IMG/VR virus record: IMGVR_UViG_3300023174_000039
Coordinates: 124,001 to 188,000 of that record
Strand: one strand, 5' to 3'
Length of the DNA stretch: 64,000 nt
Positions 1 to 49,011 of the stretch are shown one piece after another. The notes under the pieces are model-generated. The model searched no databases. It was not told the origin of the DNA and saw nothing but the letters and a program-made list of their open reading frames with translations. The first letter of the stretch is position 1, and each line of letters begins with the position of its first letter. Position numbers and translations under genes: made by a program.

Positions 1-222
1 CACGGTGCTAGAATCAAATGGGGCAGACCGTTTGATTCAATTACACAATGGGACGAAGTGGCCACCTGGGGCATAGAGTTCTTTGGCCTGCCTGGTGATC
101 GCTATGTCACCGACATCAACATCAACGAAATGGTTTGGTGGTTCCGAGACCCACGTGATCAAACCCTGTTTACCTTGCGCAATGGATCAGCACAATGCAT
201 CCAATTACAATTCGAGACGTGA
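1..222 (+). CDS. 5'-truncated small phage protein of the paralogous F-x-F...F-x-L family
   Basis: Frame 1 is open from base 1 to TGA at 220-222. C-terminal WWFRDPRDQTLFTLRNG resembles neighbouring paralogs. Confidence 0.6.
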   Translation, partial: HGARIKWGRPFDSITQWDEVATWGIEFFGLPGDRYVTDININEMVWWFRDPRDQTLFTLRNGSAQCIQLQFET

Positions 223-410
223 GTCCGTTTGACGCAATTGGATACAAGTTTCAATTGATACAGGCAGGCTTGGTCATGGATGATGATTTTTCTTGGTCGT
301 ATGTTCCATCCACCTGGGACAACTTCACCGGCGAAACACACGGCAAATATGTGGTGTTTCAATTTCGTGAAGCTAATCTAGCAACTTTTTATCAATTAAA
401 ATGGACATGA
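195..410 (+). CDS. small hypothetical phage protein (same family)
   Basis: 71-aa ORF ending VFQFREANLATFYQLKWT; ATGA overlap with the next gene. Confidence 0.7.
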   Translation: MHPITIRDVSPFDAIGYKFQLIQAGLVMDDDFSWSYVPSTWDNFTGETHGKYVVFQFREANLATFYQLKWT

Positions 411-1219
411 AATACTTTTTACTTGCACTTGCTCTTGTGGTGTCTCCAGCCTGGAGCAAGACCAAAACAGCTAACTTGCCCACAGAGTCCGTGTTGATAT
501 TCAATGTGTCAACCAATAAATCTGAATATGAACGCAACGCCACAGAGCAACGTGCCATTGCGTCGATCACCAAGATCATGACTGCCATGGTTACCCTGGA
601 TTATGATCGTGACCTGGGCAAACAACTCATGCACCGGCCAAGTGTGAGCACAAGTTTGCCCCGGCAACTGTACACACGACAAGACTTGCTCACTGCCATG
701 TTGGTCAAAAGTGACAATGGGGCCGCAGAGACCCTGGCCCAAGACTATCCCGGGGGTGTGTCTGCTTTTGTGCAACGCATGAATCTACAGGCACGCGAAT
801 GGGGCATGAGCCGAACTGAATTTGTAGATCCACATGGCCTTAGTTCTGGCAACATCAGCACAGCACATGATGTAGCTGACATGATTACTACCTCCACCGG
901 CTACTGGTTCATTCGAGAAACCTCAATCAAGAAACAAGTGGCCATTGAAACTCAACAAAAGAAACGAGTGCGTACCATCAGTCTTGCCCATACCAGCGCA
1001 CCCATGTTGTTTGAGTTTGACAACATCATTGTGAGCAAAACTGGACTGACATCGGCAGCAGGTTGGTGCGTGGGCATGGCAGTGAATCAGCGCCAGCAAC
1101 AGTATGTTATTGTGGTGTTGGGCGCACCCAACAAGGCACATCGTTTTGAAGTGGTCAAAGACATGATGTACAACCATGTGCTGGATCAGAATATTCCCTA
1201 CTCCTTGGATTTGCAATAA
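407..1219 (+). CDS. pbpG: D-alanyl-D-alanine endo/carboxypeptidase, peptidase S11 (PBP7-like), secreted
   Basis: Signal peptide MKYFLLALALVVSPAWS; SxxK (ASITKIMTAMV), SxN (SDN) and KTG motifs. Confidence 0.88.
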   Translation: MKYFLLALALVVSPAWSKTKTANLPTESVLIFNVSTNKSEYERNATEQRAIASITKIMTAMVTLDYDRDLGKQLMHRPSVSTSLPRQLYTRQDLLTAMLVKSDNGAAETLAQDYPGGVSAFVQRMNLQAREWGMSRTEFVDPHGLSSGNISTAHDVADMITTSTGYWFIRETSIKKQVAIETQQKKRVRTISLAHTSAPMLFEFDNIIVSKTGLTSAAGWCVGMAVNQRQQQYVIVVLGAPNKAHRFEVVKDMMYNHVLDQNIPYSLDLQ

Positions 1220-1226
1220 TTACAAC

Positions 1227-1460
1227 ATGCTAGAAGAAAGAGTTATAGACTCTAGAAAACGAGAAAGTTTCCAGTACTCCCGGGAAATTTCCAAACCTTT
1301 TGGCAAATTAGATCATGTGCTGGATTGGTGCAAAACCGAACTTGTAGGCGACTGGCGTTGGCAATTGGTAGATGTGAGTTCGGATAGTCGTCCGGGACGC
1401 TACATTTTCTACTTTGATTTGGAACGAGACTTTTTTGCCTTTACTCTACAATGGTCCTAG
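1227..1460 (+). CDS. small hypothetical phage protein (same family)
   Basis: Contains DWC...GDWRW and ends YIFYFDLERDFFAFTLQWS; ATG at 1227. Confidence 0.7.
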   Translation: MLEERVIDSRKRESFQYSREISKPFGKLDHVLDWCKTELVGDWRWQLVDVSSDSRPGRYIFYFDLERDFFAFTLQWS

Positions 1461-1465
1461 CCTGG

Positions 1466-1494
1466 TTGACCAATAAATCCCCTTATGCTATACT
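1466..1494 (+). promoter_or_regulatory. sigma70-type early promoter
   Basis: TTGACC-17 nt-TATACT. Confidence 0.75.
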
Positions 1495-1520
1495 GTTCAT
1501 AACACCTTGGGAGAAACTTT

Positions 1521-1754
1521 ATGATTCAAATTGAAAACCTTACACCCTACCAGTGCGAGATGCTGGACATAATGTGGGAACTAGAAAGCCAAGAACAATA
1601 TGTTGAATGGTATGAACTGTTGGATCCAGAAGATCAACTGTTGGCCGAATCCCTGCAATGCTTGATCATCATGGAAAGTCTTGAGCCCACAATTGCAGGC
1701 ATGGACAATTACTGGTTGGCCACTAACTACCTTAAGAAATTTCAACTGCAATGA
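1521..1754 (+). CDS. hypothetical acidic protein
   Basis: 77-aa ORF with GGGAGA RBS. Confidence 0.7.
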   Translation: MIQIENLTPYQCEMLDIMWELESQEQYVEWYELLDPEDQLLAESLQCLIIMESLEPTIAGMDNYWLATNYLKKFQLQ

Positions 1755-2083
1755 ATCACAAATTTTTGGTCATGTGGTGCAACGAAGGTCTTGAGTGTGT
1801 GGTTGACCTAACCGAGGATGAAAAAAATCGTACTTGGTCTGTACTCGCGGGAAAACCTCCGGTGAGTCAATTGCCCAGCCTACACCACTTGATTCTACGT
1901 GCTAGATACAACCAACAACGCCATTATGAAATTTACACCGTGGAAGCCACAGAAGGCATCTCAGCAGATGACATCCGCGATATGTTTGAAGGTTCTCCAC
2001 AGATGTCCGCTGACACCATACGTGAACGTGGTCATTGCATACACAGTGATCGAGCCAAATCTAATCGGGTATTGATTACCTAA
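1751..2083 (+). CDS. hypothetical phage protein
   Basis: 110-aa ORF, ATGA-coupled to the upstream gene. Confidence 0.75.
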   Translation: MNHKFLVMWCNEGLECVVDLTEDEKNRTWSVLAGKPPVSQLPSLHHLILRARYNQQRHYEIYTVEATEGISADDIRDMFEGSPQMSADTIRERGHCIHSDRAKSNRVLIT

Positions 2084-2091
2084 ATTAGAGG

Positions 2092-2120
2092 TTGACAACA
2101 TAGTATATTTGCTATATAAT
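2092..2120 (+). promoter_or_regulatory. consensus sigma70 promoter
   Basis: TTGACA-17 nt-TATAAT. Confidence 0.85.
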
Positions 2121-2196
2121 ACACACAAGCTAACCAAGTATGGTACTTGGCAGCTTATAACCCGACGCATGGTGCGTCATTACTAAAGGACCTAGC

Positions 2197-3249
2197 ATGG
2201 CACAAAAACGCCTTACTCGTAAACTCACTGACGTTATTGCAGAAGTTGAAAAGCAACTCAAAGCACATTACAACGTCACACAAAAAGACCTTGATGCTTG
2301 GCGAGCCCGAGCAAAGGCTCTATCACACAAATTCCCTATCAGTAGCATGATCCAGATTGAAGATCTGTGGATCGACTACGAAGTTCAACGAGATGTGTTA
2401 CACAAGCACATTATCAACATCATGCGGAAGTGGGATCCACGTATCTGCTCACCTGGATCTGCATGCCGCTTTGGTGGAAAACCCCCAATCTATTTGTACG
2501 ACGCCCAGCACCGTACCATTGCCGCTGGCATCTTGGGATTCACTGAGATTCCTTGTGCTGTGGTAGAAACAACAGATCCAAACTTTGCCAGTTATGCGTT
2601 TGAAATGCTCAACGACACAGGTGTAAAACGCCTTACTCCCGGCGACCTTCACCGCAACGCTCTGGTGCGTTACAAGAACGGCAGTCGAGACAGCAAGGTA
2701 GTCCATGCCAGAACCATGCAAGATCAATTTGATACCGTAGGCATTGACTTGCAAGACAAAGGCAGTCGCAACAGCGATAATCTGCGTGGCGACAACGACT
2801 ACTTCTTCAGTCACTTCAAGTATGCACAAAAAGGCATCGAAGTAGATGAGAAGGGCCGAGTACTGTTTGAAGTCTTGAATTCTATCAAGACAGCATTTCC
2901 ATTGCAAGAGGAAATTGATCAAGGTGTTTACATTGGACTGTTGGAATTGCACAAGTTAAGTCGTGCAGAGACAACCGAATTGCCTGACAGCTGGATGAAT
3001 GAATTGTTAAATGTAGTCAAGAAAACCTACAAGAGTTCTAGCCTGATCCATGCCAAGGCCAAGGTACAATGGGAACACGTTAACCCTGGTGGCACCTGGA
3101 CTGCTCCTACTGCTATGAGCAACTTCATGCGCGAATTGTATATTCGCAACGGTGGCACCCAATTGAACTTGCCCTATCACGGTGAAGGTGCTAAAATGGG
3201 TATTACTGATGGCAATGTTGCCCCAGGACTTTTTCCCGAGGAAAACTAA
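2197..3249 (+). CDS. ParB/Srx-superfamily (DGQHR-like) domain protein
   Basis: IDYEVQR...IYLYDAQHRT motif; AAGGA RBS; 350 aa. Confidence 0.6.
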   Translation: MAQKRLTRKLTDVIAEVEKQLKAHYNVTQKDLDAWRARAKALSHKFPISSMIQIEDLWIDYEVQRDVLHKHIINIMRKWDPRICSPGSACRFGGKPPIYLYDAQHRTIAAGILGFTEIPCAVVETTDPNFASYAFEMLNDTGVKRLTPGDLHRNALVRYKNGSRDSKVVHARTMQDQFDTVGIDLQDKGSRNSDNLRGDNDYFFSHFKYAQKGIEVDEKGRVLFEVLNSIKTAFPLQEEIDQGVYIGLLELHKLSRAETTELPDSWMNELLNVVKKTYKSSSLIHAKAKVQWEHVNPGGTWTAPTAMSNFMRELYIRNGGTQLNLPYHGEGAKMGITDGNVAPGLFPEEN

Positions 3250-3250
3250 A

Positions 3251-3772
3251 ATGAAAAATGCATTTCATAACTATCCTGCAATCTATTTGCCACTGGCGTC
3301 AATGACCGACCCTTGGGAAATCTGTGAATTTTTACATGATAGAAATATCAGACAATACACCTATTTCTTTGCTACTAGTTTGGGCATACTAAAATATGGG
3401 CAAAGCGCCAACGATAATAGTGTGTACTGTGGTAACCGTATATACAGACAAGCAGGCAATATACTTGGTTGGCCCAAGGGCCTAATAGGCAACAGTGGGG
3501 ACGACATGACTGGTATTAGTCGGGACTATGCAGAAATGTACAGAAAAACTTTACACAGGATGGATGTGGTAGTTGGTGTAATTGATATGTCTGGACACAC
3601 TGACAAAGACTGTGAAGAATTAGAACGAAATCTTATTGACCTGCATATCCAACAGCGCGGTCATGCCCCGATTGGAAACAAGGATAATCAGACTTTGTTA
3701 AATGAACGAAGATATCACAATCAACGACAGCTAGAAAAGTTCGGTGTTTATACCTTGGATAGTCATGCTTAA
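3251..3772 (+). CDS. hypothetical protein, possibly a divergent GIY-YIG-like nuclease
   Basis: Spacing of YTYFF...LKYGQS...RIYRQ...ELERNLI...PIGN. Confidence 0.45.
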   Translation: MKNAFHNYPAIYLPLASMTDPWEICEFLHDRNIRQYTYFFATSLGILKYGQSANDNSVYCGNRIYRQAGNILGWPKGLIGNSGDDMTGISRDYAEMYRKTLHRMDVVVGVIDMSGHTDKDCEELERNLIDLHIQQRGHAPIGNKDNQTLLNERRYHNQRQLEKFGVYTLDSHA

Positions 3773-4340
3773 AGAAAGCCTAGAACAATTTACAGCACCA
3801 GTGTACGGTAAGACTAAACGTACACCGGACACATACCGCACTGTGGCCGACCACTGCACCGGACACTTGACACGCCTGGTTGCAGAGTACCGCAGTGTCA
3901 AAAATAATCAACAATTGTTGCGTGAAATCCGTAACGACATTGACTACTATCTGCGCAGGTACCACGAGTACTGTATCAAACAACGTGATGGCATGAGTGC
4001 TCACTATCACGAACAAGGTGCAGATGAAGACACAGATTTTGAGCATCTAGTTCCGGCCGCAAGAATTCGAGATCTGTTGCTGGCCGGAGTCATCACTGTG
4101 GTACAGGCATTAAATGCACCTACAGTAAAATTGAGTAGAGCCAAACATGCTCTGCTCAAAGAAGCAGGTTGGGCCAGTACCACCCCAGACATGTGGTTGC
4201 CTTTCCGTAGATACAGTCAGGTGTTTTCAGCCGTTTTTGAAACACACGATGGAACTGCCGTTGATCCCGAGACCTGGACGTTGGAACAACATTTCAACTA
4301 TTTTAAACATTTGATTATTGAAACAAAGGAAACAGTATGA
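3765..4340 (+). CDS. hypothetical protein with an EHLVP (HNH/DUF1524-like) motif
   Basis: About 191 aa; contains DFEHLVPA. Confidence 0.5.
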   Translation: MLKESLEQFTAPVYGKTKRTPDTYRTVADHCTGHLTRLVAEYRSVKNNQQLLREIRNDIDYYLRRYHEYCIKQRDGMSAHYHEQGADEDTDFEHLVPAARIRDLLLAGVITVVQALNAPTVKLSRAKHALLKEAGWASTTPDMWLPFRRYSQVFSAVFETHDGTAVDPETWTLEQHFNYFKHLIIETKETV

Positions 4341-4588
4341 GCCGTTTAGCATTACACAGTCGCCCCTTCGTGGTGTTTGATCCTGCCAACAAAGACCATC
4401 GCAAGTGGTTTGCAGAATTCAATCGAAGTGCCCGATGGGGCTCTTGCCCTGTGAGATTTGTGGTAGAGGATGATAATGGAGACTTGGTCACAATGATCCA
4501 ACGCAGACTGATTCAGTACTATGTGAGTAGAGAGTTTGCCCCTGTGGCTGTGAGATCTGTTGTAAAAAAACAACACAAATTTGGTTGA
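4337..4588 (+). CDS. hypothetical phage protein
   Basis: 83 aa; AAGGA RBS and ATGA overlap. Confidence 0.75.
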   Translation: MSRLALHSRPFVVFDPANKDHRKWFAEFNRSARWGSCPVRFVVEDDNGDLVTMIQRRLIQYYVSREFAPVAVRSVVKKQHKFG

Positions 4589-4619
4589 CCAATAAAGCCC
4601 GATTTGCTATAATCATAGT

Positions 4620-4853
4620 ATGAAATTAGATACTAATGAAACTTTGCAGTGGATCGGGGCTGTTTTTATTGTAGCAGGCCACAGTCTCAACGCCGTGGGT
4701 CCTGCGGCCTATCCTTACAATATTCTTACATTTTTTATAGGTACCGTGCTGTTTTTAGCATGGACCATCCGTGTTGCAAATAAGCCACAGATGTTTGTAA
4801 ACCTTGTGAGTGTGGCAATTGGGCTTACAGGGCTTGTAAAAGCATATGGTTGA
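4620..4853 (+). CDS. small three-TM membrane protein
   Basis: Hydrophobic 77 aa; ATG lies 6 nt after TATAAT. Confidence 0.75.
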   Translation: MKLDTNETLQWIGAVFIVAGHSLNAVGPAAYPYNILTFFIGTVLFLAWTIRVANKPQMFVNLVSVAIGLTGLVKAYG

Positions 4854-4909
4854 CCAATAAATCCCGATTTGTTATAATACTTGTATAGTAATTAAAAAGG
4901 AGCTCAGAA

Positions 4910-5197
4910 ATGACAGCAACAGAATCAATCCGCACCGCAGTTGGCAACGACATGCAACGTCAACGTCAGATCAACATGTACGGTTGCACCGAACAAGATC
5001 TTCGTGACAGTGTTGAATCTTCAATCACATTCAGAACATCTGGTCCTGCCATGATTGTGGCCAGCATGATGAGTGATGCACAAGAGATGATGGCCTACGA
5101 GCAACCAGACTTCCGCACAATCGAATCCCAGCGTCAACTGTTAAATCGTGCAAAATTTGTGCTTTTTGAGTACATCATGGACCGTGCAAACGGTTGA
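4910..5197 (+). CDS. hypothetical early protein
   Basis: Own promoter and AAGGAG RBS. Confidence 0.8.
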   Translation: MTATESIRTAVGNDMQRQRQINMYGCTEQDLRDSVESSITFRTSGPAMIVASMMSDAQEMMAYEQPDFRTIESQRQLLNRAKFVLFEYIMDRANG

Positions 5198-5253
5198 CCA
5201 GAAATTCCCAATTTGTTATAATACTTGTATAGTAATTAAAAAGGAGCTCAGAA

Positions 5254-5607
5254 ATGACAGCAATCGCAACAGTAGTGACCCCAGAAGCAGTTCAGTCAGC
5301 TTGTCAAGAAGCCAGCATCCAGGCCCAGTCTGCGGCAAGAGCATTCCATGCCAAGCATGGTGATCGTGATGCCTGCGGCTTTGCCTGGGTCAATGTTTGG
5401 GGTGTTCGCTCAAACAGCAAGATCGGCAAAGCCTTGCAAGCTCAAGGCTTCCGCAAGGACTACACCGGTTCTTTGTGCATGTGGAACCCCAGCGGCTTCC
5501 CTACACAATCAATCAGCATCCTGGAAGCAGGTGCTGAAGCCTACGCTCAGGTGTTGAAAGATCGACTGGGCTTGGACCGTGTTTATGCAGGGTCACGTTT
5601 GGATTGA
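5254..5607 (+). CDS. hypothetical early protein (CGFAWV motif)
   Basis: Own promoter and AAGGAG RBS. Confidence 0.8.
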   Translation: MTAIATVVTPEAVQSACQEASIQAQSAARAFHAKHGDRDACGFAWVNVWGVRSNSKIGKALQAQGFRKDYTGSLCMWNPSGFPTQSISILEAGAEAYAQVLKDRLGLDRVYAGSRLD

Positions 5608-5662
5608 CCAATTAATCCCAATCTGTTATAATACTTGTATAGTAATTAAAAAGGAGTTCAAA

Positions 5663-6160
5663 ATGGGTACACGTTCAAGAATTGGTGTCATGCATGGTGA
5701 CGTTTGCAAGTCAGTTTACTGCCACTGGGATGGCTATCTGGACCACAATGGTCGCATCTTGCAGGAGCACTATGACTCTGCTCGGGCCAACCACTTGGTT
5801 GCAATGGGAGACATCAGCTCATTAGGCGCAAAGATTGGTGACGCACATCCTTTCTCAAAGTTTGAGATCAGCAAGGAGTCGCCAGATTTTGACAAGCTCA
5901 TGGCAGTACACGAACAGGCACAAGCAGAAGGTTGGACCACATTTTACGGTCGAGACCGTGGTGAGCAAGGTATAGAGTTTAAGTCAGCCATGACCTTTGC
6001 AGACTTCATGGTACAGGTTGAGAACTGTGGAGCAGAGTACTACTACATCATGAAGGACGGTGTGTGGTACACAGGTTGCCCTGGCGAGGGAGATGCTCTT
6101 GTGCCCCTGGCAACTGCCCTGGCACCTGTTGCAAAGACATGGGAAACGGTTGACCTTTAA
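5663..6160 (+). CDS. hypothetical early protein (MGTRSRIG...YCHWDGY)
   Basis: Own promoter and AAGGAG RBS; ATG at 5663. Confidence 0.8.
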   Translation: MGTRSRIGVMHGDVCKSVYCHWDGYLDHNGRILQEHYDSARANHLVAMGDISSLGAKIGDAHPFSKFEISKESPDFDKLMAVHEQAQAEGWTTFYGRDRGEQGIEFKSAMTFADFMVQVENCGAEYYYIMKDGVWYTGCPGEGDALVPLATALAPVAKTWETVDL

Positions 6161-6211
6161 TTGCCCTTTTGCTATAATACTTGTATTGTAAATTAATTAG
6201 GAGCTGAAATT

Positions 6212-6706
6212 ATGTTTGGTTTTTTTAGTAAAACAGAATCTAAAAAAGTGACAGAACAACTCACTGCCGACAGCCCGTTCTATCCAATAATAGATGTTGG
6301 GCAGGCTTGTACCTATGTTACTGTGGAATATACTGGCACAAGTTTAAGTCTGAAATTAAATACCAAAACTATTCAAGAATCAAAATTTGCACTCGAAGAA
6401 ATTGATCTTCTGAAGAAGACCGCTCAATCGATTAAAAAAGAAACTACTCTTAAGATTAAAGAACTTCGATTATCACATAGCAATCGAGTTGCCAATCGCG
6501 GCACTATGGTGCCTGGCGGAGGAAAAATTGGAACAGTTTTTCGATATCTAGAGAGATCTAGTCGTGCCTCTGAGAGAGGTGAAGTATCGTCTGCTATTAA
6601 AGAAGTTGAGGATAATATTATCAAACCAATGGACCAACTTCTATTAGGACTCGACAAATATAAACTAGTCTTGAAAAAAGAAATTTTGACAGGTGTAGTT
6701 GGTTGA
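6212..6706 (+). CDS. hypothetical coiled-coil protein (AT-rich cassette)
   Basis: Own promoter and AGGAG RBS. Confidence 0.75.
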   Translation: MFGFFSKTESKKVTEQLTADSPFYPIIDVGQACTYVTVEYTGTSLSLKLNTKTIQESKFALEEIDLLKKTAQSIKKETTLKIKELRLSHSNRVANRGTMVPGGGKIGTVFRYLERSSRASERGEVSSAIKEVEDNIIKPMDQLLLGLDKYKLVLKKEILTGVVG

Positions 6707-6762
6707 CCTTTAATTGCCGATTTGCTATAATACTTGTATTGTAAATTAATTAGGAGACCGAC

Positions 6763-7527
6763 ATGCCAGGATTTGTAGACGTAAGCAACATGACATCGCG
6801 AGAGATTCAACGTATAGGACACGCCGACGATGAGACTCCACGCCAAACTTGGAAGCCAAAATCTAAACCCCAAGGTGCCAAGCACTCAATAGACAATGTC
6901 TGGGGTGCGGCATGTGCGGCTCAACGCATTAATGGTTCCTACGTAAAAGAGACTCAATACCGGTTTGATGAGAATACAAATACCACTGTGGTTGTAAAAC
7001 AACGCAATCGCGACATCATGTCAGACATTCTGGCCAACCCTGCTGTACTCACAGTAGAGGATATTGCACAAGGTCAGGAGTGCCGTAAATTCCTAGAGCA
7101 AGACATTACCTTGCGTGGACTCAAAAGCCGGCTCACAGAATTTGATACTGTGATCAGCAGAGTGATTGCCATTACAGATGAGTTTGACTCTGCAAAACAC
7201 AAATACGAACTGGCAGTGGTTGCAAGTTTACCTGCAAGCCACCAACGTAGCCTAGCTCGTCAAGATGTTGACAGCCGTGTGCGTCAGACCACAGGCGGGT
7301 ACGTAGGTACTATGGACGTCAAAGTTGAATTTGATGTAGAAGTTGTGAGTGCCAATTACAGTCATACCTACAACATTTTTTGGGTCACTGCAATCACACA
7401 AGACAACCAAGCTGTGTTTTTCAGTTACCGATCTAAACTCACAACAGGATCTTGGATTCATATCAAAGGCACCGTCAAGGCACACCGCGATGGTAAAACT
7501 CAACTCAACCGTGTGAAGGTGATCTAA
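6763..7527 (+). CDS. hypothetical protein with a C-terminal OB-fold-like domain
   Basis: Ends WIHIKGTVKAHRDGKTQLNRVK; own promoter. Confidence 0.65.
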   Translation: MPGFVDVSNMTSREIQRIGHADDETPRQTWKPKSKPQGAKHSIDNVWGAACAAQRINGSYVKETQYRFDENTNTTVVVKQRNRDIMSDILANPAVLTVEDIAQGQECRKFLEQDITLRGLKSRLTEFDTVISRVIAITDEFDSAKHKYELAVVASLPASHQRSLARQDVDSRVRQTTGGYVGTMDVKVEFDVEVVSANYSHTYNIFWVTAITQDNQAVFFSYRSKLTTGSWIHIKGTVKAHRDGKTQLNRVKVI

Positions 7528-7655
7528 TGCGTAACTTAGCAATCGGATTCGTTTTTGGTTTGGTAGTCAGCTCAGTTGGATTTTCGGGCATTGCTCGAAT
7601 GTTTGACAAGGGCGTCCAAACCATCCAAACCCAAAGCAAGGAATTGGCCCAGTGA
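7527..7655 (+). CDS. small membrane-anchored protein (42 aa)
   Basis: TAATG coupling; begins MRNLAIGFVFGLVVSSVGFSGIAR. Confidence 0.6.
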   Translation: MRNLAIGFVFGLVVSSVGFSGIARMFDKGVQTIQTQSKELAQ

Positions 7656-7691
7656 AACGGGCAAACCCAATCAAAATTATTGCAAAAAGAC

Positions 7692-7720
7692 TTGACCATA
7701 AACTGTTCTTTTGCTATAAT
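7692..7720 (+). promoter_or_regulatory. sigma70-type early promoter
   Basis: TTGACC-17 nt-TATAAT. Confidence 0.8.
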
Positions 7721-7791
7721 ATTGATATGTTGTGTAAGAAGCAACATGTATTTTAACTTTAACTTAACAGGCAACCCCGAAAGGCAACACA

Positions 7792-8151
7792 ATGTCAGAA
7801 TCTAAACTTTTTACAGTAGCAGGCACCGCAACTAACGCAGACGGTACCACAAAGGCTCGCTTTGCGAACGACTTGGTAGCACGTATCAAGATCCTCAACA
7901 AGGCAGGCTGTACAGATATCAACTTGGTAGAATTGCCAAGCCCAATGACAAAACTGCAAGCTCTGCAGTATTTGACAGACACACAAGGCTACACTGGTGA
8001 CGCCAGCTATGCCGTAGCCAATAAATTGGCCGAGAAGACCAAGGTCGCCAAGAAAGGCGAAGTCAAGGTCACTGCTAAGAGCGTCAAGGCTCCCAAATCC
8101 AAGGTAACAGCCGAGGACTTGTTGGCAGCCGCAGAGGATGCACCTCTGTAA
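7792..8151 (+). CDS. hypothetical protein with a Lys/Ala-rich tail
   Basis: 119 aa, lying between a promoter and a terminator. Confidence 0.75.
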   Translation: MSESKLFTVAGTATNADGTTKARFANDLVARIKILNKAGCTDINLVELPSPMTKLQALQYLTDTQGYTGDASYAVANKLAEKTKVAKKGEVKVTAKSVKAPKSKVTAEDLLAAAEDAPL

Positions 8152-8168
8152 CAAATTGCAACTCTAAT

Positions 8169-8196
8169 AAAGCGGCTTTTGGGCCGCTTTTCTTTT
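8169..8196 (+). terminator. Rho-independent terminator
   Basis: AAAGCGGC-loop-GCCGCTTT followed by TCTTTT. Confidence 0.75.
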
Positions 8197-8214
8197 GACC
8201 GAGATAACTACTAC

Positions 8215-8463
8215 ATGCTTGACGAAGACCAACTACAAAAACGCATCAAAGAAATCATGGTTGATATCATGATTGTGCTGTATGAGCACGGCATCAAAGA
8301 AGCGCACATGGGCGCCATGATGAGGTTGCTGGGAGTGGATGATGAGAGTGCCGCCAAACATGATGATGAGAGTGTGGTGCTGGATGAAAAATTTGGTGAG
8401 ATGATAACCAAATTAAATAAACCAGTGCCAACAACGATCCCATCAGGCACCACCTTCCATTAA
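8215..8463 (+). CDS. hypothetical phage protein
   Basis: ATG at 8215; TAATG coupling to the next gene. Confidence 0.7.
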   Translation: MLDEDQLQKRIKEIMVDIMIVLYEHGIKEAHMGAMMRLLGVDDESAAKHDDESVVLDEKFGEMITKLNKPVPTTIPSGTTFH

Positions 8464-8711
8464 TGTCCATAACCTCATACCGTGCAGTAGAACCGCTGTA
8501 CATTGTTACCATGCGAAACAACACTCAGGCCGAGACCATGCTCAAGGCCTGGGTCAAGAGCAATCGCATTGAGCATGCCAATGTGAATGGTAATCGAATG
8601 ATGTTGCACGACCAGCGTGGGTTTGAGCAGTTCAGAGTTACTTGGAAGCACGAAGTGGACCATATCACCATTTGGGATACTTGGAACCGCAGGCACATAT
8701 ATTTAGACTAA
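8463..8711 (+). CDS. hypothetical phage protein
   Basis: 82 aa. Confidence 0.7.
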   Translation: MSITSYRAVEPLYIVTMRNNTQAETMLKAWVKSNRIEHANVNGNRMMLHDQRGFEQFRVTWKHEVDHITIWDTWNRRHIYLD

Positions 8712-8739
8712 ACTGGAGTGCCAAAATACAGGCTTTTTA

Positions 8740-8768
8740 TTGACATCGCCTCTGCAGGCGTGTATAAT
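8740..8768 (+). promoter_or_regulatory. consensus sigma70 promoter
   Basis: TTGACA-17 nt-TATAAT. Confidence 0.85.
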
Positions 8769-8795
8769 TACTATTGTTATTATAAAGGAAACATC

Positions 8796-8987
8796 ATGAC
8801 ACAACATGAACAAATCGTGGCCGCATACGAATCATATATCGCGGAAAATGAAAAGTTTACAACCAAGGGTGTGAAGGCAGCGGCAGCTCGTGCTCGCAAG
8901 GCATTGCAAGAAATGAGCAAGGGCATCAAAGAGCGTCGCAAAGAAATCACAGCTGAGAAAGAAGCATTAGCTACAGCGGCAAAATGA
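8796..8987 (+). CDS. histone H1-like (Hc1 family) protein
   Basis: ENEKFTTKGVKAAAARARKALQEM...RKEI signature; AAGGA RBS. Confidence 0.75.
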   Translation: MTQHEQIVAAYESYIAENEKFTTKGVKAAAARARKALQEMSKGIKERRKEITAEKEALATAAK

Positions 8988-9148
8988 TTGTAAAAGATAG
9001 TCAACTACATCAAACTGAATGGCCCTTGGTGCTTACTCCGGAACAGCGAGAACAACTGATACAAGAAAAGGTTGCTCGATTTACTGCCTGGTATCAGCAC
9101 TTGAAATCCAATGACCGCAATGACCGCAAAGATTGTAAATGTAGTTGA
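8984..9148 (+). CDS. small hypothetical protein (54 aa)
   Basis: ATGA coupling; fills the gap between genes. Confidence 0.4.
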   Translation: MIVKDSQLHQTEWPLVLTPEQREQLIQEKVARFTAWYQHLKSNDRNDRKDCKCS

Positions 9149-9293
9149 AGACCCAGAAACCGGCGATCTCATGCTGGATCTGGGTATGGAGTTGTGCGCC
9201 GAACTTGGGTGGCAAGAAGGCGACACACTCGACTGGCAAGACAACAAGGATGGCTCATGGATGATTCGAAAGATATCTCCTTCTCAAACTTAA
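9111..9293 (+). CDS. AbrB/MazE-like small DNA-binding protein
   Basis: GDLMLDLGMELCAELGWQEGDTLDW swapped-hairpin pattern. Confidence 0.6.
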   Translation: MTAMTAKIVNVVEDPETGDLMLDLGMELCAELGWQEGDTLDWQDNKDGSWMIRKISPSQT

Positions 9294-9766
9294 CAGACAC
9301 AATTTCTGCACAAGACTACAATTATAACACAATAGATTTGACAGATCTCAATAGTGGTATCACGGTGGCCAGCCCGACATACACCATGGCTCCAATGACA
9401 GTAAGCATGCCTACTATATCAATCAGTAGTATTACTGGTGCCAATGCGGGATATTCCAACACCATGTGGACCACAGGTACATCAGGGTTAAATGGTACGA
9501 GTGCCGCTGATCTAAATCAATCGGGCATGCTGAGTCTCCGAGGTAAAAATGCCGACATTGATATCAATGGCAAGAGCTTGATGAAAACTCTAGAAGCATT
9601 AGAGGAAAGATTAAATCTAATGACTCCCAATCCCGAACTTGAAAAAGAGTGGAATGACTTGAAGAAACTGGGCGATCGGTATCGTAAGTTGGAGAAGAAG
9701 TGCAAAGAAAAAGCCGAAATATGGAACAAACTCAAATCCATGCCCAAACCCAACGTAAAATTATGA
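9257..9766 (+). CDS. hypothetical protein with a Thr/Ser-rich N-terminus and coiled-coil C-terminus
   Basis: GKNADIDINGKSL...LEERL...PNPELEKEW. Confidence 0.7.
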   Translation: MDDSKDISFSNLTDTISAQDYNYNTIDLTDLNSGITVASPTYTMAPMTVSMPTISISSITGANAGYSNTMWTTGTSGLNGTSAADLNQSGMLSLRGKNADIDINGKSLMKTLEALEERLNLMTPNPELEKEWNDLKKLGDRYRKLEKKCKEKAEIWNKLKSMPKPNVKL

Positions 9767-10581
9767 CATCAAAACAAAGAATCAAACATATCTCTAAATG
9801 GATCAAAACATACGCTACCAAGAACAAGATTTCAACTCTTGTGGTGGGCATTTCAGGTGGCATTGACAGTTCGGTTGTGAGTGCCTTGTGCGCCGAAACT
9901 GGACTCAAAACCATTGTGGTACAGATGCCAATCCGTCAGGCCAAAACCTTGGACAACCGCAGTTCAATGCAAGCCAGTTGGTTGTTGGAACGCTACAAAG
10001 ACAACGTCACACACATGAGCTTGGATTTGACTCCTGTGTATGCCGCATTTGAGAAAAAGGTTGGACCATTCTGTTCAGTAGAACAAGAACCCAACCAATC
10101 TGAACAATTGGCATTTGCCAACAGCCGTGCTAGACTGCGCATGATGACCCTGTACCAAATTGCACAAAGCCATGGTGGTATTGTGGTAGGCACAGGCAAC
10201 AAGGTAGAAGACTTTGGTGTGGGCTTCTACACCAAGTATGGTGATGGTGGAGTGGACATCAGTCCTATTGGTGACTGTCTCAAAACCCAAGTTTGGGACA
10301 TGGGCAGAGAATTTGGCTTGCCACAAGAAATCATTGATGCTGCACCAACCGATGGATTATGGACAGACGGCCGCACAGACGAAGATCAATTGGGCATGAG
10401 CTATCCTGAATTGGAACGAGCCATGGCCAATGACGAGCTAGAGCGACAGGATGTGTACAACACCTTGCCCATAGAATTAGGCCGGGAAGAACGAGCACAA
10501 CTCAAGAAGTATCGTGCTATCCGTGCTCGAAACCTGCACAAGATGTTGCCGATCCCGGTTTGTGAGATCAAAACACAATGA
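9763..10581 (+). CDS. nadE: NH3-dependent NAD+ synthetase
   Basis: [41 protein letters not shown] and DEDQLG motifs. Confidence 0.95.
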
Positions 10582-10901
10582 CCTATGTTGTCACAGAAGC
10601 ATGTGTAAAATGCAAGTATACCGATTGTGTCAACGTCTGCCCTGTAGACTGTTTCAAAATGGGTCCCAACTTCCTGGTTATTGATCCAGACGAATGCATC
10701 GACTGTGCAGTGTGTGTGCCCGAATGTCCTGTGGATGCCATTTATGCCGAAGAGGATCTGCCAGAGGATCAGCTGGAGTTTGTACAAATCAATCGTGAAC
10801 TGGCTCTTTTGTGGCCCACTATTACCAAATCAATCGCACCACTAGATGATGCCGAACACTGGGCAACGGTAAAACTCAAACGTCATTTACTTGACAAATA
10901 A
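10578..10901 (+). CDS. fdxA: 7Fe ferredoxin (FdxA family)
   Basis: [26 protein letters not shown]...[12 protein letters not shown]. Confidence 0.93.
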
Positions 10902-10919
10902 CACACTCTAGTGTATACT
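10891..10919 (+). promoter_or_regulatory. sigma70-type promoter
   Basis: TTGACA-17 nt-TATACT. Confidence 0.75.
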
Positions 10920-11015
10920 GTATTGAGTGGAATAACTATCCACTTAATGGCAGTAATGAAGCATTTTGGCCCGGTCTGACCGGGGATCTCAACCCAAGTG
11001 AGTAAGTAAAAGCCT

Positions 11016-11594
11016 ATGGAAACAAACTTAACATTAACCAAATTTGACTTTGTGCCTTGGATTTCACGGTTCTTTAAAACTGTGGGACTCGTGGCAGTGG
11101 CAGTGGCAGTCGTGGCAGTTTGTGACGCTCGCTTAGAAAGTCTACGTAATGCGCAAAATGCCATGCCACCAGGGTATGTCACTGCCGCAGAACAAACACG
11201 CCAATTAGAGTGCCTAACACGCAACATCTATTGGGAAGCCGCAAGCGAGCCTTTTGAAGGCAAAGTAGCAGTGGCCCAGGTCACACTGAACCGTATGCAA
11301 TCGGGCAAGTTCCCAGATTCAGTCTGCGGTGTAGTACATCAAAAGAATGTGTTTTACGAAAAAGTTGTGTGTCAGTTCTCGTGGTATTGTGAAGGCAATC
11401 ACAAGATGAAACCAGTACACAAACCCTTGTGGCGTGAATCAGAAGAAGTGGCCAAAAAGGTCTTGCTGGAAGGCTTTCGCTTGCCCAGTTTGAAGAACGC
11501 ACTTTACTATCACGCTGACTATGTAAATCCCGGATGGAAGCATCCTAAAATTGAGCAAATCGGACATCATATTTTCTACGGAGAGCGCAAATGA
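11016..11594 (+). CDS. cell wall hydrolase (Hydrolase_2/SleB family), membrane-anchored
   Basis: CLTRNIYWEAASE...AVAQVTLNR...CQFSW...YYHADYVNPGW...IGHHIFY. Confidence 0.92.
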   Translation: METNLTLTKFDFVPWISRFFKTVGLVAVAVAVVAVCDARLESLRNAQNAMPPGYVTAAEQTRQLECLTRNIYWEAASEPFEGKVAVAQVTLNRMQSGKFPDSVCGVVHQKNVFYEKVVCQFSWYCEGNHKMKPVHKPLWRESEEVAKKVLLEGFRLPSLKNALYYHADYVNPGWKHPKIEQIGHHIFYGERK

Positions 11595-11887
11595 ATATCG
11601 AATCGGTACGTAACTTTCTTTCAACAACACTGACCAAAATCTCTGCAGAAACCCTGGGTTGGCTGGCAGCCATTGTGATCCATGCCGCAACTGTTCCTAC
11701 TCTGATTGCCCTAATGACCGGGCTTTCAGATCGCACACCCAATTTGGATATTGTGCTGTTTGCCTGGGCAGGTTTGGTGCTAATGTTCTTTAGAGCAGTG
11801 GTGCTCAAAGACCTGCTAAACATCATCACAATTGGCCTGGGCTTTATAGTGCAGGCTGTGTTGATGGCCTTGATCTTGTTCAAATAA
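11591..11887 (+). CDS. three-TM membrane protein (possibly PQ-loop-like)
   Basis: Hydrophobic 98 aa. Confidence 0.7.
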   Translation: MNIESVRNFLSTTLTKISAETLGWLAAIVIHAATVPTLIALMTGLSDRTPNLDIVLFAWAGLVLMFFRAVVLKDLLNIITIGLGFIVQAVLMALILFK

Positions 11888-11890
11888 CAG

Positions 11891-11919
11891 TTGACCACTA
11901 AATCCTGTTATGCTACAAT
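11891..11919 (+). promoter_or_regulatory. sigma70-type promoter (leaderless)
   Basis: TTGACC-17 nt-TACAAT; ATG 6 nt downstream. Confidence 0.7.
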
Positions 11920-11925
11920 AACAGC

Positions 11926-12189
11926 ATGAAACTTGTACATCCTCACTGTAATTTTGTTGTAGATACTGGCCCTTGGACACAGGATCTCATGGACATACTG
12001 GAAGGCAGGCACAAAGTAGGAGACTTTATTGAGGCTCGCAACGAACTGTCGGCTCGTCACGAACGCTGGGTAAAATGGCTGATCCAACACGGCTACGAAG
12101 CAGGCCGACACTACTGGACCTGCAAAGAAGGCTTTCGTTTTTCTTCTGGTGGCATTGCCATAGCATTCGCATTAGGGATAACAAAATGA
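11926..12189 (+). CDS. hypothetical phage protein
   Basis: 87 aa ending FRFSSGGIAIAFALG. Confidence 0.7.
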   Translation: MKLVHPHCNFVVDTGPWTQDLMDILEGRHKVGDFIEARNELSARHERWVKWLIQHGYEAGRHYWTCKEGFRFSSGGIAIAFALGITK

Positions 12190-12410
12190 TCAAGAGTGGT
12201 CGATCTGTTAAAACTCTGCGTCCTGGAGATCCAGACTTCACATTCTCACCGGATGGCATTCAAATAGTGTCACGAGCGGCATTTGAGATCAGCAATAACT
12301 GTCCTGCTGAATACAAGAGTATCTTTATCACTGCCATCAACGCAGGGTGGCTCAAACCTGTGGCCTACATGCGAGACACCGAATATACCATGGAGTTATT
12401 ACGAAAATGA
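12186..12410 (+). CDS. hypothetical phage protein
   Basis: ATGA coupling at 12186. Confidence 0.65.
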   Translation: MIKSGRSVKTLRPGDPDFTFSPDGIQIVSRAAFEISNNCPAEYKSIFITAINAGWLKPVAYMRDTEYTMELLRK

Positions 12411-12550
12411 TATAGATCAAGATCCTGTTGACATCAAGTATTCAGAAGAGTACGATGCCTACTACAATCAAAAGACCAACGAGTGGACCGAACCCAGGTG
12501 TGATGATCCTGCTTGTGAGTACTGTGCCAAGCGTCCAGATCATCCTCTAG

Positions 12551-12579
12551 TTGACAAATAAATTCGGGCATGCTATAAT
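12551..12579 (+). promoter_or_regulatory. consensus sigma70 promoter
   Basis: TTGACA-17 nt-TATAAT. Confidence 0.85.
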
Positions 12580-12603
12580 ACACACATACTTTGGAGATAC
12601 TCA

Positions 12604-12996
12604 ATGAGCATGCACCTACATCATCCTGCGCTTTCCTACAACGGCAAGAAGCGCGGCAAGATCAAATTCCGCAACGCAGAAGAAGCACGTAAGGCACGTG
12701 AGCTTGATGCAAGCTGGAAAGAGATGCAGTCCAAATGGCAATTGGATGCTGACGAAAAACGGCGCCAACGTGCGCTGGCGGCCGAGCCTCTGAGCTACAG
12801 TTTGACCACACCCATTGGTCGTAGCAACACACATGACATTCCCAGCCGAGTGACCCCAGGTTCTTCAACTGCAAGTGTGCATAAGGTCTACACCGGCACC
12901 AAGGTAAAAGGTATTGCTACCATGCACAAGTCAAATGCTGTGCCTGTGTTTAGTGATGAAGAGGCAGTAGAAATCTCCCGCATGCGCCGTGGTTAA
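12604..12996 (+). CDS. T4-like conserved hypothetical protein
   Basis: YTGTKVKGIATMHKSNAVPVF motif; GGAG RBS. Confidence 0.75.
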   Translation: MSMHLHHPALSYNGKKRGKIKFRNAEEARKARELDASWKEMQSKWQLDADEKRRQRALAAEPLSYSLTTPIGRSNTHDIPSRVTPGSSTASVHKVYTGTKVKGIATMHKSNAVPVFSDEEAVEISRMRRG

Positions 12997-13023
12997 CTCT
13001 CCCTATAATAGAAAGGCTTACTC

Positions 13024-13287
13024 ATGAAAATCTCATCACATTTCAGTCCCGAAAGAAATCTGGAACACGAGACCTTTATCGACATGCCTGTGCGAGTGCC
13101 GGTATCTCGATGGTTGGAAAAACAGTTTGGTCGGCCGTGGCATCCTTTGGACAATCCCAAAGGACGATGGACCATGGCCTGGGCAGGTCGCAACGGCAAC
13201 TTTACGGACCTAACCAATTTTGACAAGTATCAAGTTTACTTTGCTGATCAGCAAGACTTGTGTACTTTTAAGTTGACTTTTCCGTGA
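13024..13287 (+). CDS. small hypothetical protein (F-x-F...F-x-L family)
   Basis: Ends VYFADQQDLCTFKLTFP. Confidence 0.7.
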   Translation: MKISSHFSPERNLEHETFIDMPVRVPVSRWLEKQFGRPWHPLDNPKGRWTMAWAGRNGNFTDLTNFDKYQVYFADQQDLCTFKLTFP

Positions 13288-13727
13288 TCAAGAAACGTTT
13301 ACTAACCAATAGAGGATTTGATGTTATGAGTACAGATATGTGGGAAAAACAAGAAGTTGTGCGCTTGCTCAAAGGAGCACCAGGCACACTGTACCAAGAA
13401 GCAGATGATGTCAACAAGACTATCATGCGTGATTGGATCAAGAGTTTGTTGCAAAAACAACCTATAACTGTGAATTTTACCAAAGCAGATGGCACTGACC
13501 GTGACATGAAGTGTACACTAAATCACGATCTTATTCCACCTGCACCGCCAAAGTCAAACACAGGCAGAGTTGATGGGATTATGACAGAGTCTACAAAACC
13601 CAAAAAGGAGCCCAAAGAGTCGGATCCTGCTGTGATCAAAGTGTATGATTTAGAAGCTCAAGCCTGGCGCAGTTTCCGTATGGACCGACTAAAGAAGATC
13701 ACTGCGGAATTGGTGTTCGATAAGTAA
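13284..13727 (+). CDS. WYL_2/SH3-like beta-barrel protein
   Basis: VNFTKADGTDRDMKCTL...VYDLEAQAWRSFR. Confidence 0.75.
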   Translation: MIKKRLLTNRGFDVMSTDMWEKQEVVRLLKGAPGTLYQEADDVNKTIMRDWIKSLLQKQPITVNFTKADGTDRDMKCTLNHDLIPPAPPKSNTGRVDGIMTESTKPKKEPKESDPAVIKVYDLEAQAWRSFRMDRLKKITAELVFDK

Positions 13728-13733
13728 TTGCTT

Positions 13734-13952
13734 ATGGCAAAAGAAGAAACTATAAGCATGGAAGGTAAAGTGGAGGAGATTCTACCAGCCGCTATGTTTC
13801 GCATCAAATTAGACAACGTAAACAGCATGGTCCTGGGACATCTAAGTGGACGTATGCGCACCAACAATATCAAAGTATTACTGGGCGACCGTGTGGAAAT
13901 CGAGTTCACACCCTACGATCTCACTCGTGGTCGTATTACACGTCGCAAATAA
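13734..13952 (+). CDS. infA: translation initiation factor IF-1
   Basis: [18 protein letters not shown]...GHLSGRMR...GDRV...YDLTRGRI. Confidence 0.96.
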
Positions 13953-13959
13953 ATACAAG

Positions 13960-14508
13960 ATGGAACTACGTGACCACATCAATCTTGTAGAAGCAAGCAC
14001 CCGTCCGGCAAAACTGGAAACCACCCCTTTACCTTATGGAGTCAAAGACCTTGAACCCATAATGAGTAAAGAAACTATAGACTATCATTTTGAGCATTTG
14101 GCCAAAGGCTATGCCAAACGCTACAATGCAGGAGAAGGCAATGCGGATTTTAATCGTGCTGGCAGTTTTTTACACAACAAGTTTTTCCCTCAGCTTCGGG
14201 CTCCCAAAGGCGCCAACCGGCCCCGAGGTGCAGTACTTGCGCTCATAGAAGAACACTTCGAAACCTGGGAAGATTTCAAGGACGCTTTTAAAGAAACCGC
14301 AATGAAGATCCAAGGATCCGGTTGGGTGTATTTGAGCACCAGTGGTGCAATCAAAACCATTGCCAATCATGCTGTACGCACCGACATCTGTGTGCTGGTA
14401 GATTGGTGGGAGCATTCTTGGGCATTAGATTACCAAGCAGACAAAGAACGCTACCTAGACAATATCTGGAAGATCATTGACTGGGACGTTTGTAACGAAA
14501 GACTATAA
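13960..14508 (+). CDS. sod: Fe/Mn superoxide dismutase with an N-terminal extension
   Basis: [12 protein letters not shown] and LHN ligand segments, GSGWVYL, DWWEH; TAAATA 4 nt upstream. Confidence 0.9.
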
Positions 14509-18098: not shown

Positions 18099-18100
18099 AT

Positions 18101-48112: not shown

Positions 48113-48161
48113 TTGACACCACTCTGAAAATCCTGTATAATTATGTGTACAGGATTTTTTT
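48113..48161 (+). promoter_or_regulatory. sigma70 promoter overlapped by a terminator-like inverted repeat
   Basis: TTGACA-17 nt-TATAAT; AAAATCCTGTA...TACAGGATTTT followed by a T run. Confidence 0.7.
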
Positions 48162-48938: not shown

Positions 48939-49011
48939 ATATTTTCGTAATGGTTGCTTGTTGTTGATCAACACAGTATAATAACAATATAATTGGTAAA
49001 AAAGGAACTTG

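What the first reader, a model, noticed from the sequence alone, without database searches (positions are those of the whole stretch)
4583..6763. Promoter-repeat cassette array in which stop codons lie inside the next -35 box
Seen: six consecutive genes each have their own TTGACC-17-TATAAT unit. Five of the units share a TATAATACTTGTAT...AGGAG leader, and one pair is identical over 53 bp, extending into the codons MTA. Five upstream genes stop at the TGA within TTGACC (4588, 4853, 5197, 5607, 6706); the sixth stops in the spacer (6160). Established: repeated early-promoter elements mediate modular gene shuffling in T4-type phages. Inference: an integrase-free cassette array in which the repeat supplies stop codon, promoter, RBS and start.
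Basis: partly seen in the sequence, partly recalled or inferred. Interest (0 to 1): 0.6.

Follow-up and report, generated by a model that had tools for sequence, protein, structure and literature searches.

The report
Repeated early promoters that shuffle phage genes
A giant T4-type lake phage puts the same ~66-base promoter-plus-ribosome-site unit in front of each small early gene, and related phages show that genes have been swapped, inserted and reordered at these units; this is a compact variant of the promoter repeats (PeSLs) already known to do this in T4-like phages.

Summary
Window 4583-6763 holds six GGTTGACC-17-TATAAT units. Five share one leader, one pair is identical over 53 bp, five upstream genes stop at the TGA inside the -35 box and one at a TAA in the spacer.

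The window lies in a 331.7-kb uncultured freshwater phage. It has a T4-type capsid and portal, a RecA/UvsX-like recombinase and no integrase.

About 25 copies of the unit sit in clusters, all on the + strand. The exact 30-base leader occurs in at least 82 other IMG/VR stretches.

Five 320-353 kb relatives and many fragments carry different cassette content and order, and the joins lie in the units:
- One low-GC gene (6212-6706) sits between two near-identical units and is absent from the closest relative.
- Two cassettes occur in the opposite order in two independent contigs.
- One gene's 3' end is joined to four different downstream genes.
- Junctions with a unit keep their neighbours in 13 of 28 comparisons; junctions without one do so in 46 of 55.

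The promoter spacer follows the upstream gene and the SD-ATG stretch follows the downstream gene. This places the crossover in the invariant -10/5'UTR core.

The six units have no stem-loop, so they fail the strict PeSL definition. Promoter activity, timing and mini-circles remain untested.

The parts
4337..4588 (+). Upstream gene (83 aa, family F8). Its last residues and its TGA are encoded by the first unit (..TTT GGT TGA).
   Evidence: Orthologues that are not followed by a unit have different C-termini.
4583..4619 (+). Unit 1: GG + TTGACC-17-TATAAT, then 6 nt and the ATG. A candidate leaderless promoter.
   Evidence: The same leaderless form stands before the orthologues in G001, G002 and G004.
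4620..4853 (+). Cassette gene F9: 77 aa, DUF6552-like, just under the Pfam cut-off.
   Evidence: The allele resembles G001/G002/G004 (about 80% nt) and not G005, the relative that is closest across the flanking genes.
4848..4909 (+). Unit 2: -35, spacer, extended -10, conserved 5'UTR, SD.
4910..5197 (+). Cassette gene F10: 95 aa, no family match.
5192..5253 (+). Unit 3. Positions 5211-5263 are identical to 4867-4919, a probable gene-conversion tract that reaches codon 3.
   Evidence: The next gene starts MKA in G005, G001 and G002 but MTA here, and the SD-ATG spacer matches unit 2.
5254..5607 (+). Cassette gene F11: 117 aa, phrog_22149.
   Evidence: Its 3' end with its half-unit is joined to four different downstream genes in other contigs.
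5602..5662 (+). Unit 4.
5663..6160 (+). Cassette gene F12: 165 aa, phrog_1987, widespread in large phages. Its last residues V-D-L are encoded by the -35 and spacer of unit 5, with a TAA stop.
6148..6211 (+). Unit 5: a rare leader variant, 96% identical to unit 6 over 56 nt.
6212..6706 (+). Cassette gene F13: 164 aa, GC 36.6%, GC3 25.5%. Absent from all five jumbo relatives.
   Evidence: Homologues elsewhere sit between other neighbours.
6701..6762 (+). Unit 6. The single unit of G005 has the left flank of unit 5 and the body of unit 6.
6763..7527 (+). Gene F14: 254 aa, with a weak OB-fold hit at the C-terminus.
7690..7748 (+). A seventh, more diverged unit ahead of gene 7792-8151.
8169..8190 (+). 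First + strand terminator-like hairpin with a T-run after the array. The likely end of the multi-promoter transcription unit.
   Evidence: No terminator-like site lies between the units.

Best explanation
The region is a hyperplastic block of small early genes in an uncultured freshwater T4-type jumbo phage.

Each gene is preceded by a ~66-bp unit made of these parts:
- GG plus a near-consensus host sigma-70 promoter (TTGACC, 17-bp spacer, TGn-TATAAT).
- A predicted start at the A seven bases after the -10.
- A ~24-nt unstructured A/U-rich 5'UTR and a strong AAGGAG ribosome site.
- The ATG at a fixed 30 +/- 1 nt after the -10.

There is no terminator between genes. The array should therefore give nested read-through transcripts that end near 8169-8190.

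The unit closes all three reading frames, so an upstream gene can run into it. It most often ends at the TGA inside the -35.

The -10/5'UTR core of about 30-35 bp is nearly invariant within and between related genomes. It therefore acts as portable homology for the phage's (or host's) general recombination machinery. Crossovers in the core swap, insert, delete and reorder gene-plus-half-unit modules, without an integrase.

Shown here: the anatomy, the copy number, the lack of hairpins, the variable neighbours, and the linkage of each half-unit to its flanking gene.

Inferred: promoter use by host RNA polymerase, early timing, and homologous recombination as the agent.
For: Anatomy and copy number:
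- Unit anatomy.
- 35 perfect TTGAC-N18-TATAAT sites in the genome, all on the + strand; about 25 copies of the extended unit, in clusters.
- The exact 30-mer leader occurs in 82 IMG/VR stretches.
- The leaders fold no better than shuffled sequence, with z +1 to +2 for units 2-5. No terminators lie between the genes.

Lineage and recombinases:
- Gp23 capsid E 1e-97, portal E 2e-106, a RecA-like gene, and no integrase or resolvase.

Shuffling:
- Cassette maps of five relatives differ.
- Window versus G005 homology breaks at 1456, 1521, 4848, 6203, 6701, 10891 and 11928 fall in units. That is 7 of 14 ends against 7.6% of the sequence, P 3e-5.
- F13 is missing from G005 exactly between the two units.
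- The order F11 then F10 occurs in L079 and L088, which come from different metagenomes.
- 18 of 41 recurring upstream ends and 23 of 35 recurring downstream starts have two or more different partners.
- Adjacency is kept in 13 of 28 comparisons at unit junctions and 46 of 55 elsewhere, Fisher P 7e-4.

Crossover position:
- Spacer identity follows the upstream gene (0.84 against 0.73). SD-ATG identity follows the downstream gene (0.70 against 0.59).
- There is a conversion tract between units 2 and 3.

Precedent:
- PeSL-mediated shuffling in T4-like phages (PMC2839356, PMC4122927).
Against: - No transcript data were obtained. The public runs are held only as contigs, which break at the units and cannot show starts, circles or rare deletions.
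- Set against gene boundaries rather than random positions, the excess of homology breaks at units is modest. About 7 of 10 boundary-located breaks fall at units, while about 45% of boundaries carry a unit.
- The comparisons are not phylogenetically independent; G002 and G004 are near-duplicates.
- All genomes are metagenome assemblies.
- The direction of the F13 event (insertion here or deletion in G005) is unresolved.
- The two units that flank F13 share a spacer type. A simple core crossover does not predict this, so a later conversion or a duplication has to be assumed.
Confidence: 0.75

Rival explanations
1. The units are only expression signals kept alike by selection for strong transcription and translation. 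Gene content differs among relatives through ordinary indels that have nothing to do with the repeats.
For: Near-consensus promoter and SD, a fixed geometry and unstructured leaders are what selection for expression would give. Breaks are only modestly enriched at units relative to gene boundaries in general.
Against: - The same 3' end with its half-unit is joined through an identical core to four different genes.
- The half-units are linked to their flanking genes.
- F13 is present or absent exactly between two units.
- Adjacency is lost mainly at unit junctions.
- There is a conversion tract between neighbouring units.
Confidence: 0.12
2. The apparent shuffling is an assembly artefact: short-read assemblers jump between co-occurring relatives at the shared repeat.
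For: Logan contigs break at the units. Depth there is 5-40 times that of the flanks, with many different loose ends.
Against: - The invariant core is only about 30-35 nt and the whole unit about 66 nt. This is shorter than a read and than the usual largest k-mers.
- Each unusual order recurs in independent metagenomes. F11 then F10 occurs in L079 and L088. One arrangement is shared by L021, L034 and L061, and another by L022, L026, L072 and L082.
- A 357-nt contig of another run spans F12, unit 5 and F13 without a mismatch (record 12).
Confidence: 0.06
3. The repeat is the site of an unrecognised site-specific recombinase, making this a true integron-like system.
For: The core sequence is very strongly conserved, beyond what a promoter needs. 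Much of the genome consists of unknown proteins.
Against: - No tyrosine or serine recombinase was found in the 95%-complete record.
- A RecA/UvsX-like gene is present.
- The T4-type precedent works with general recombination (PMC2839356).
- F13 homologues in other contigs (L111-L117) are flanked by a different repeat sequence with the same layout. This argues for homology rather than a specific site.
Confidence: 0.05

Closest known systems
PeSLs (promoter-early stem-loops) of T4-like phages RB49/phi1, T4/PST and KVP40/nt-1 (Arbiol et al. 2010, PMC2839356; Comeau et al. 2014, PMC4122927)
   Same: - Repeated, near-consensus sigma-70-type promoters in front of small ORFans in hyperplastic regions of a T4-type genome.
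- Indels, replacements and reordering among relatives with the joins in the repeats.
- No integrase.
- The motif begins at the stop codon of the upstream gene.
   Different: - The six units here have no stem-loop or terminator.
- The stop lies inside the -35 (or in the spacer) rather than in an AT-rich stretch upstream of it.
- The repeat extends through a conserved 5'UTR and SD to a fixed-distance ATG.
- The crossover maps to the -10/5'UTR core, whereas the crossovers sequenced in RB49 and phi1 lay in or next to the stem-loop.
- The host lineage is an uncultured 320-350 kb freshwater group.
- Mini-circles have not been shown here.
Integron gene cassettes
   Same: Arrays of single promoterless-size genes bounded by a recurring sequence, with variable content between relatives.
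   Different: There is no integrase and no attC-type folded site. Every cassette has its own promoter. Exchange appears to be homology-driven.
T4 early promoters in general
   Same: Many strong host-polymerase promoters with conservation beyond the two hexamers, all reading the same way through blocks of small early genes.
   Different: The hexamers here are near-perfect sigma-70 consensus, as in RB49, rather than the T4 GTTTAC type. The transcribed leader is also repeated.

Membership tests
PeSL (promoter-early stem-loop) | Strong sigma-70-like promoter (-35, about 17 bp, -10) repeated many times in the genome | tested here: met
   Sequence match only: 11 of 12 to consensus plus the TG extension. 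35 perfect sites, all on the + strand; about 25 extended copies. Promoter activity was not measured.
PeSL (promoter-early stem-loop) | A stable stem-loop (terminator or attenuator) within or next to the promoter | tested here: not met
   No terminator-like site lies in or between the six units. Units 2-5 fold no better than shuffles, z +1 to +2.1. Other promoters in the same genome do carry one, for example genome 74,922-74,991, window 8740 and window 48113.
PeSL (promoter-early stem-loop) | Located in hyperplastic regions, next to ORFans that differ between related phages | tested here: met
PeSL (promoter-early stem-loop) | Exchange points between relatives lie in or at the motif | tested here: met
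PeSL (promoter-early stem-loop) | Mini-circles formed by recombination between neighbouring motifs | not testable with these tools
   Only assembled contigs of the runs were available. The 'goes back' joints at the repeats are ambiguous.
T4-type phage (T4 superfamily) | Gp23-family major capsid protein and gp20-family portal | tested here: met
   PF07068 at 324.6 bits and PF07230 at 352.5 bits in the same record.
Integron | IntI-type tyrosine recombinase next to the array | tested here: not met
   No PF00589 or PF00239 match in the 331-kb record. The positive controls gave matches.

The most novel reading that the evidence does not exclude
The invariant ~30-35-nt -10/5'UTR core is a lineage-wide exchange site. 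It lets co-occurring freshwater T4-type jumbo phages draw on a common pool of early ORFans. Each gene travels with the right half of its own unit and the left half of the next one, stop codon included. This would be an integrase-free, promoter-borne analogue of an integron. A differently sequenced repeat with the same layout plays the same role in other phage contigs.
Probability: 0.35. Interest if true: 0.6.

Novelty: new variant of a known kind. Interest (0 to 1): 0.45.

Why it matters
- It extends repeat-mediated modular shuffling from a few cultured T4-like phages to an abundant, uncultured group of 320-350 kb lake phages.
- It shows that a stem-loop is not needed: a promoter plus a conserved leader is enough.
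- It maps the exchange zone by linkage: the spacer goes with the upstream gene and the SD-ATG stretch with the downstream gene.
- The units mark where such phages keep their fast-turnover early genes, which are the likely host-takeover and anti-defence functions.
- The units give a compact natural part (stop, strong promoter, 5'UTR and ribosome site in 66 bp), and they include a leaderless subclass.

Tried and rejected
- Megablast of 4000-8000 against cultured phage records found no match. The lineage has no close cultured relative; protein hits were remote only.
- A search for close F13 relatives in IMG/VR by peptide patterns found none. The word-based protein search did find 52-71% homologues.
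- Laying runs X2-X5 was meant to reveal circles or deletions. All four are Logan contigs that fragment at the repeats, and the joints are ambiguous repeat placements. This counts neither for nor against circles.
- The control region 30-43 kb was too diverged at the DNA level to serve as a clean synteny control. It was replaced by the test of junctions with and without a unit inside 1-14 kb.
- Nothing informative came from an Rfam scan of 3500-9000, a PDB sequence search with F12 and F14, or a tRNA scan.
- RegB and RegA family searches in the genome were blank, but the control genomes were blank too, so the result is uninformative.
- The idea that F13's low GC marks a recent foreign origin was weakened. 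Its homologues are low-GC in every context, so this is a trait of the gene family.
Full report
**What is there**

Six units of GG-TTGACC, a 17-bp spacer and TATAAT start at 4585, 4850, 5194, 5604, 6150 and 6703. All are on the + strand, and each has TG one base before the -10, which is an extended -10.

Five units continue with a shared leader that begins ACTTGTAT and ends in AGGAG. The first unit has the ATG six bases after the -10.

Positions 4867-4919 and 5211-5263 are identical over 53 nt and include ATG ACA GCA A. The ORFs ending at 4588, 4853, 5197, 5607 and 6706 stop at the TGA inside TTGACC. The ORF ending at 6160 stops at a TAA in the spacer.

The window has 16 matches to TTGAC-N18-TATAAT at up to one mismatch, against 1.2 expected.

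**Where it lies**

The window is bases 124,001-188,000 of a 331,654-bp IMG/VR virus record judged 95% complete. The record encodes:
- a Gp23-family capsid protein (E 1e-97) and a T4-type portal (E 2e-106);
- a RecA/UvsX-like protein;
- no tyrosine or serine recombinase and no sigma-70 region 2.

It is therefore a very large T4-type phage. It has no close cultured relative. Runs that hold it are lake, river and other freshwater metagenomes.

**The unit across the genome and the lineage**

The genome has 35 perfect TTGAC-N18-TATAAT sites, all on the + strand. About 25 copies of the extended unit sit in clusters near genome positions 40.5, 75, 116, 125-136 (the start of the window), 214-216 and 235-236 kb.

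The exact 30-base -10-plus-leader occurs in 82 further IMG/VR stretches. These include five genomes of 320-353 kb.

From 146 non-identical units, the consensus runs from GG before the -35 to the ATG. The spacer is partly conserved, the -10/leader core is nearly invariant, the SD is AAGGAG-like, and the ATG lies 30 +/- 1 nt after the -10.

The predicted start is the A seven bases after the -10. In 15 units that A is the A of the start codon, which makes them leaderless candidates.

Units 2-5 fold no better than shuffled sequence (z +1 to +2.1). No terminator-like site lies between the genes. The first one on the + strand is at 8169-8190. Rfam has nothing for the units.

**The stop codon**

The unit closes all three frames: TGA at +1 of the -35, usually TAA at +8, and TAG at +36.

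Of the upstream genes that run into a unit, 9 of 15 in this genome use the TGA. In the wider set the counts are 42, 11 and 4 for the three stops.

Orthologues change their C-termini depending on whether a unit follows:
- F8 ends in ..KFG here and differently in four relatives.
- F12 ends in ..TVDL, encoded by the -35 and spacer, where a unit follows, and in unrelated residues where none does.
- F47 ends in ..EFG where a unit follows and in ..EFSE where none does.

So the repeat really does supply the last residues and the stop.

**Do the units mediate shuffling?**

Five relatives (G001-G005) were compared.

- *G005.* This relative is closest over the array (90% nt from F10 to F12). It has the same run F10-F11-F12-F14 but lacks F13. 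Its single unit there carries the left flank of unit 5 and the body of unit 6. It also has a 658-aa gene between F8 and the F9 unit, and a diverged F9 allele. The window's F9 is closer to that of G001, G002 and G004.
- *G001.* It has two extra genes between F11 and F12.
- *G003, G002 and G004.* The same cassettes lie at separate genomic places, next to other genes.
- *Smaller contigs.* F11 precedes F10 in L079 and L088, which come from two different metagenomes.
- *F11's partners.* The 3' end of F11 with its half-unit is joined through the same core to four different genes.

Across 193 non-identical junctions, 18 of 41 recurring upstream ends and 23 of 35 recurring downstream starts have two or more different partners.

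Within window 1-14,000, gene junctions with a promoter unit keep their adjacency in relatives in 13 of 28 comparisons. Junctions without one do so in 46 of 55 (Fisher P 7e-4).

Seven of the 14 ends of window-G005 homology blocks fall in units, which cover 7.6% of the sequence (P 3e-5). Set against gene boundaries rather than random positions, this excess is modest. These tests are not phylogenetically independent.

**Where the crossover lies**

Among 93 units with the common core:
- Pairs with the same upstream gene but different downstream genes have spacers 84% alike. Pairs with only the downstream gene in common reach 73%, and the background is 68%.
- The last 10 nt before the ATG follow the downstream gene: 70% against 59%, with a background of 51%.

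The left half of a unit is therefore inherited with the gene before it and the right end with the gene after it. The join falls in the invariant -10/5'UTR core.

Units 2 and 3 in the window also share an SD-ATG stretch and a second codon that the orthologous units of the relatives do not share. F11 starts MKA in three relatives and MTA here. This indicates a recent conversion between neighbouring units.

**F13**

F13 has GC 36.6% and GC3 25.5%, against 43-54% for its neighbours.

Homologues of 52-71% identity sit in other metagenome contigs between different neighbours. There they are flanked by a differently sequenced promoter repeat with the same layout, again with the TGA of the -35 as the stop. 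Some of those units have GC-rich hairpins upstream.

The homologues are low-GC everywhere, so low GC is a trait of the gene family. Whether the window gained F13 or G005 lost it cannot be decided.

**Comparison with what is known**

PeSLs of T4-like phages are repeated sigma-70-like early promoters with a stem-loop. They flank ORFans in hyperplastic regions, begin at the upstream stop codon, mediate indels and swaps by recombination, and form mini-circles (PMC2839356, PMC4122927).

The present units share the promoter, the location, the ORFan association and the exchange points. They lack the stem-loop, so they fail the strict definition. Other promoters in the same genome do carry terminator hairpins.

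The differences from PeSLs are:
- the stop lies inside the -35;
- the repeated 5'UTR and SD;
- a crossover zone in the -10/leader core;
- the host lineage.

**Limits**

No transcript or raw-read evidence could be obtained. The runs are held only as contigs, which break at the units and show many different flanks there.

One contig of an independent run spans F12, unit 5 and F13 without a mismatch (record 12). The unusual orders recur in independent assemblies, which argues against chimeras.

Promoter use, early timing and the recombination agent are inferences.

**Verdict**

This is a compact, stem-loop-less variant of a known mechanism in a new and abundant phage group. It is of moderate interest.

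Noticed in passing
window 4608-4622 and 11914-11929; the same in G001, G002, G004 and G005: A subclass of units has the ATG exactly six bases after the -10 and no SD. These are probably leaderless early mRNAs. 15 of 146 units are of this kind. The A of the ATG sits where the leadered units have their predicted +1.
   Followed up: partly
L111:975-1605 and L114:670-1352: A second promoter-leader repeat of different sequence (a TTGACA-type -35, a different spacer and leader) flanks F13 homologues in other phage contigs. The TGA stop again lies inside the -35, and some units have GC hairpins upstream.
   Followed up: partly
window 8740-8768 and 48113-48160; genome 74,922-74,991 and 107,660-107,710: Other promoters of this genome are true promoter-plus-hairpin composites. 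The hairpin is in the spacer, around the -10 and followed by a T-run, or forms a terminator just upstream of GGTTGACC.
   Followed up: partly
window 6212-6706: The F13 family is low in GC (GC3 about 26-38%) in every contig where it occurs, against 45-48% around it.
   Followed up: yes
window 32296-33804: A 502-aa protein with repeated short Gly/Asn/Thr-rich motifs (T-G-N-V/I-T-G-G-N type), tail-fibre-like. Pieces of it match several places in the relatives.
   Followed up: partly
window 18080-19852, 19880-24226 and 49009-51273: An S8 subtilase; a 1448-aa protein with an S8-like segment remotely similar to proteins of Agrobacterium phage Atu_ph07 and Sinorhizobium phage Phosso; and a full-length ClpB-type double AAA+ chaperone. 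All are phage-encoded.
   Followed up: no
window 6148-6203 and 6701-6756; G005; L119:7126-7156: A rare leader variant (..GTATTGTAAATTAATTAGGAG) occurs twice here, once in G005, and once in an unrelated context in one other IMG/VR contig, where it sits behind a hairpin.
   Followed up: partly
window 4500-5700: In four freshwater runs the word depth at the units is 5-40 times that of the flanking genes, with many different sequences adjoining. The repeat is a hub shared by many co-occurring genomes or cassettes.
   Followed up: no
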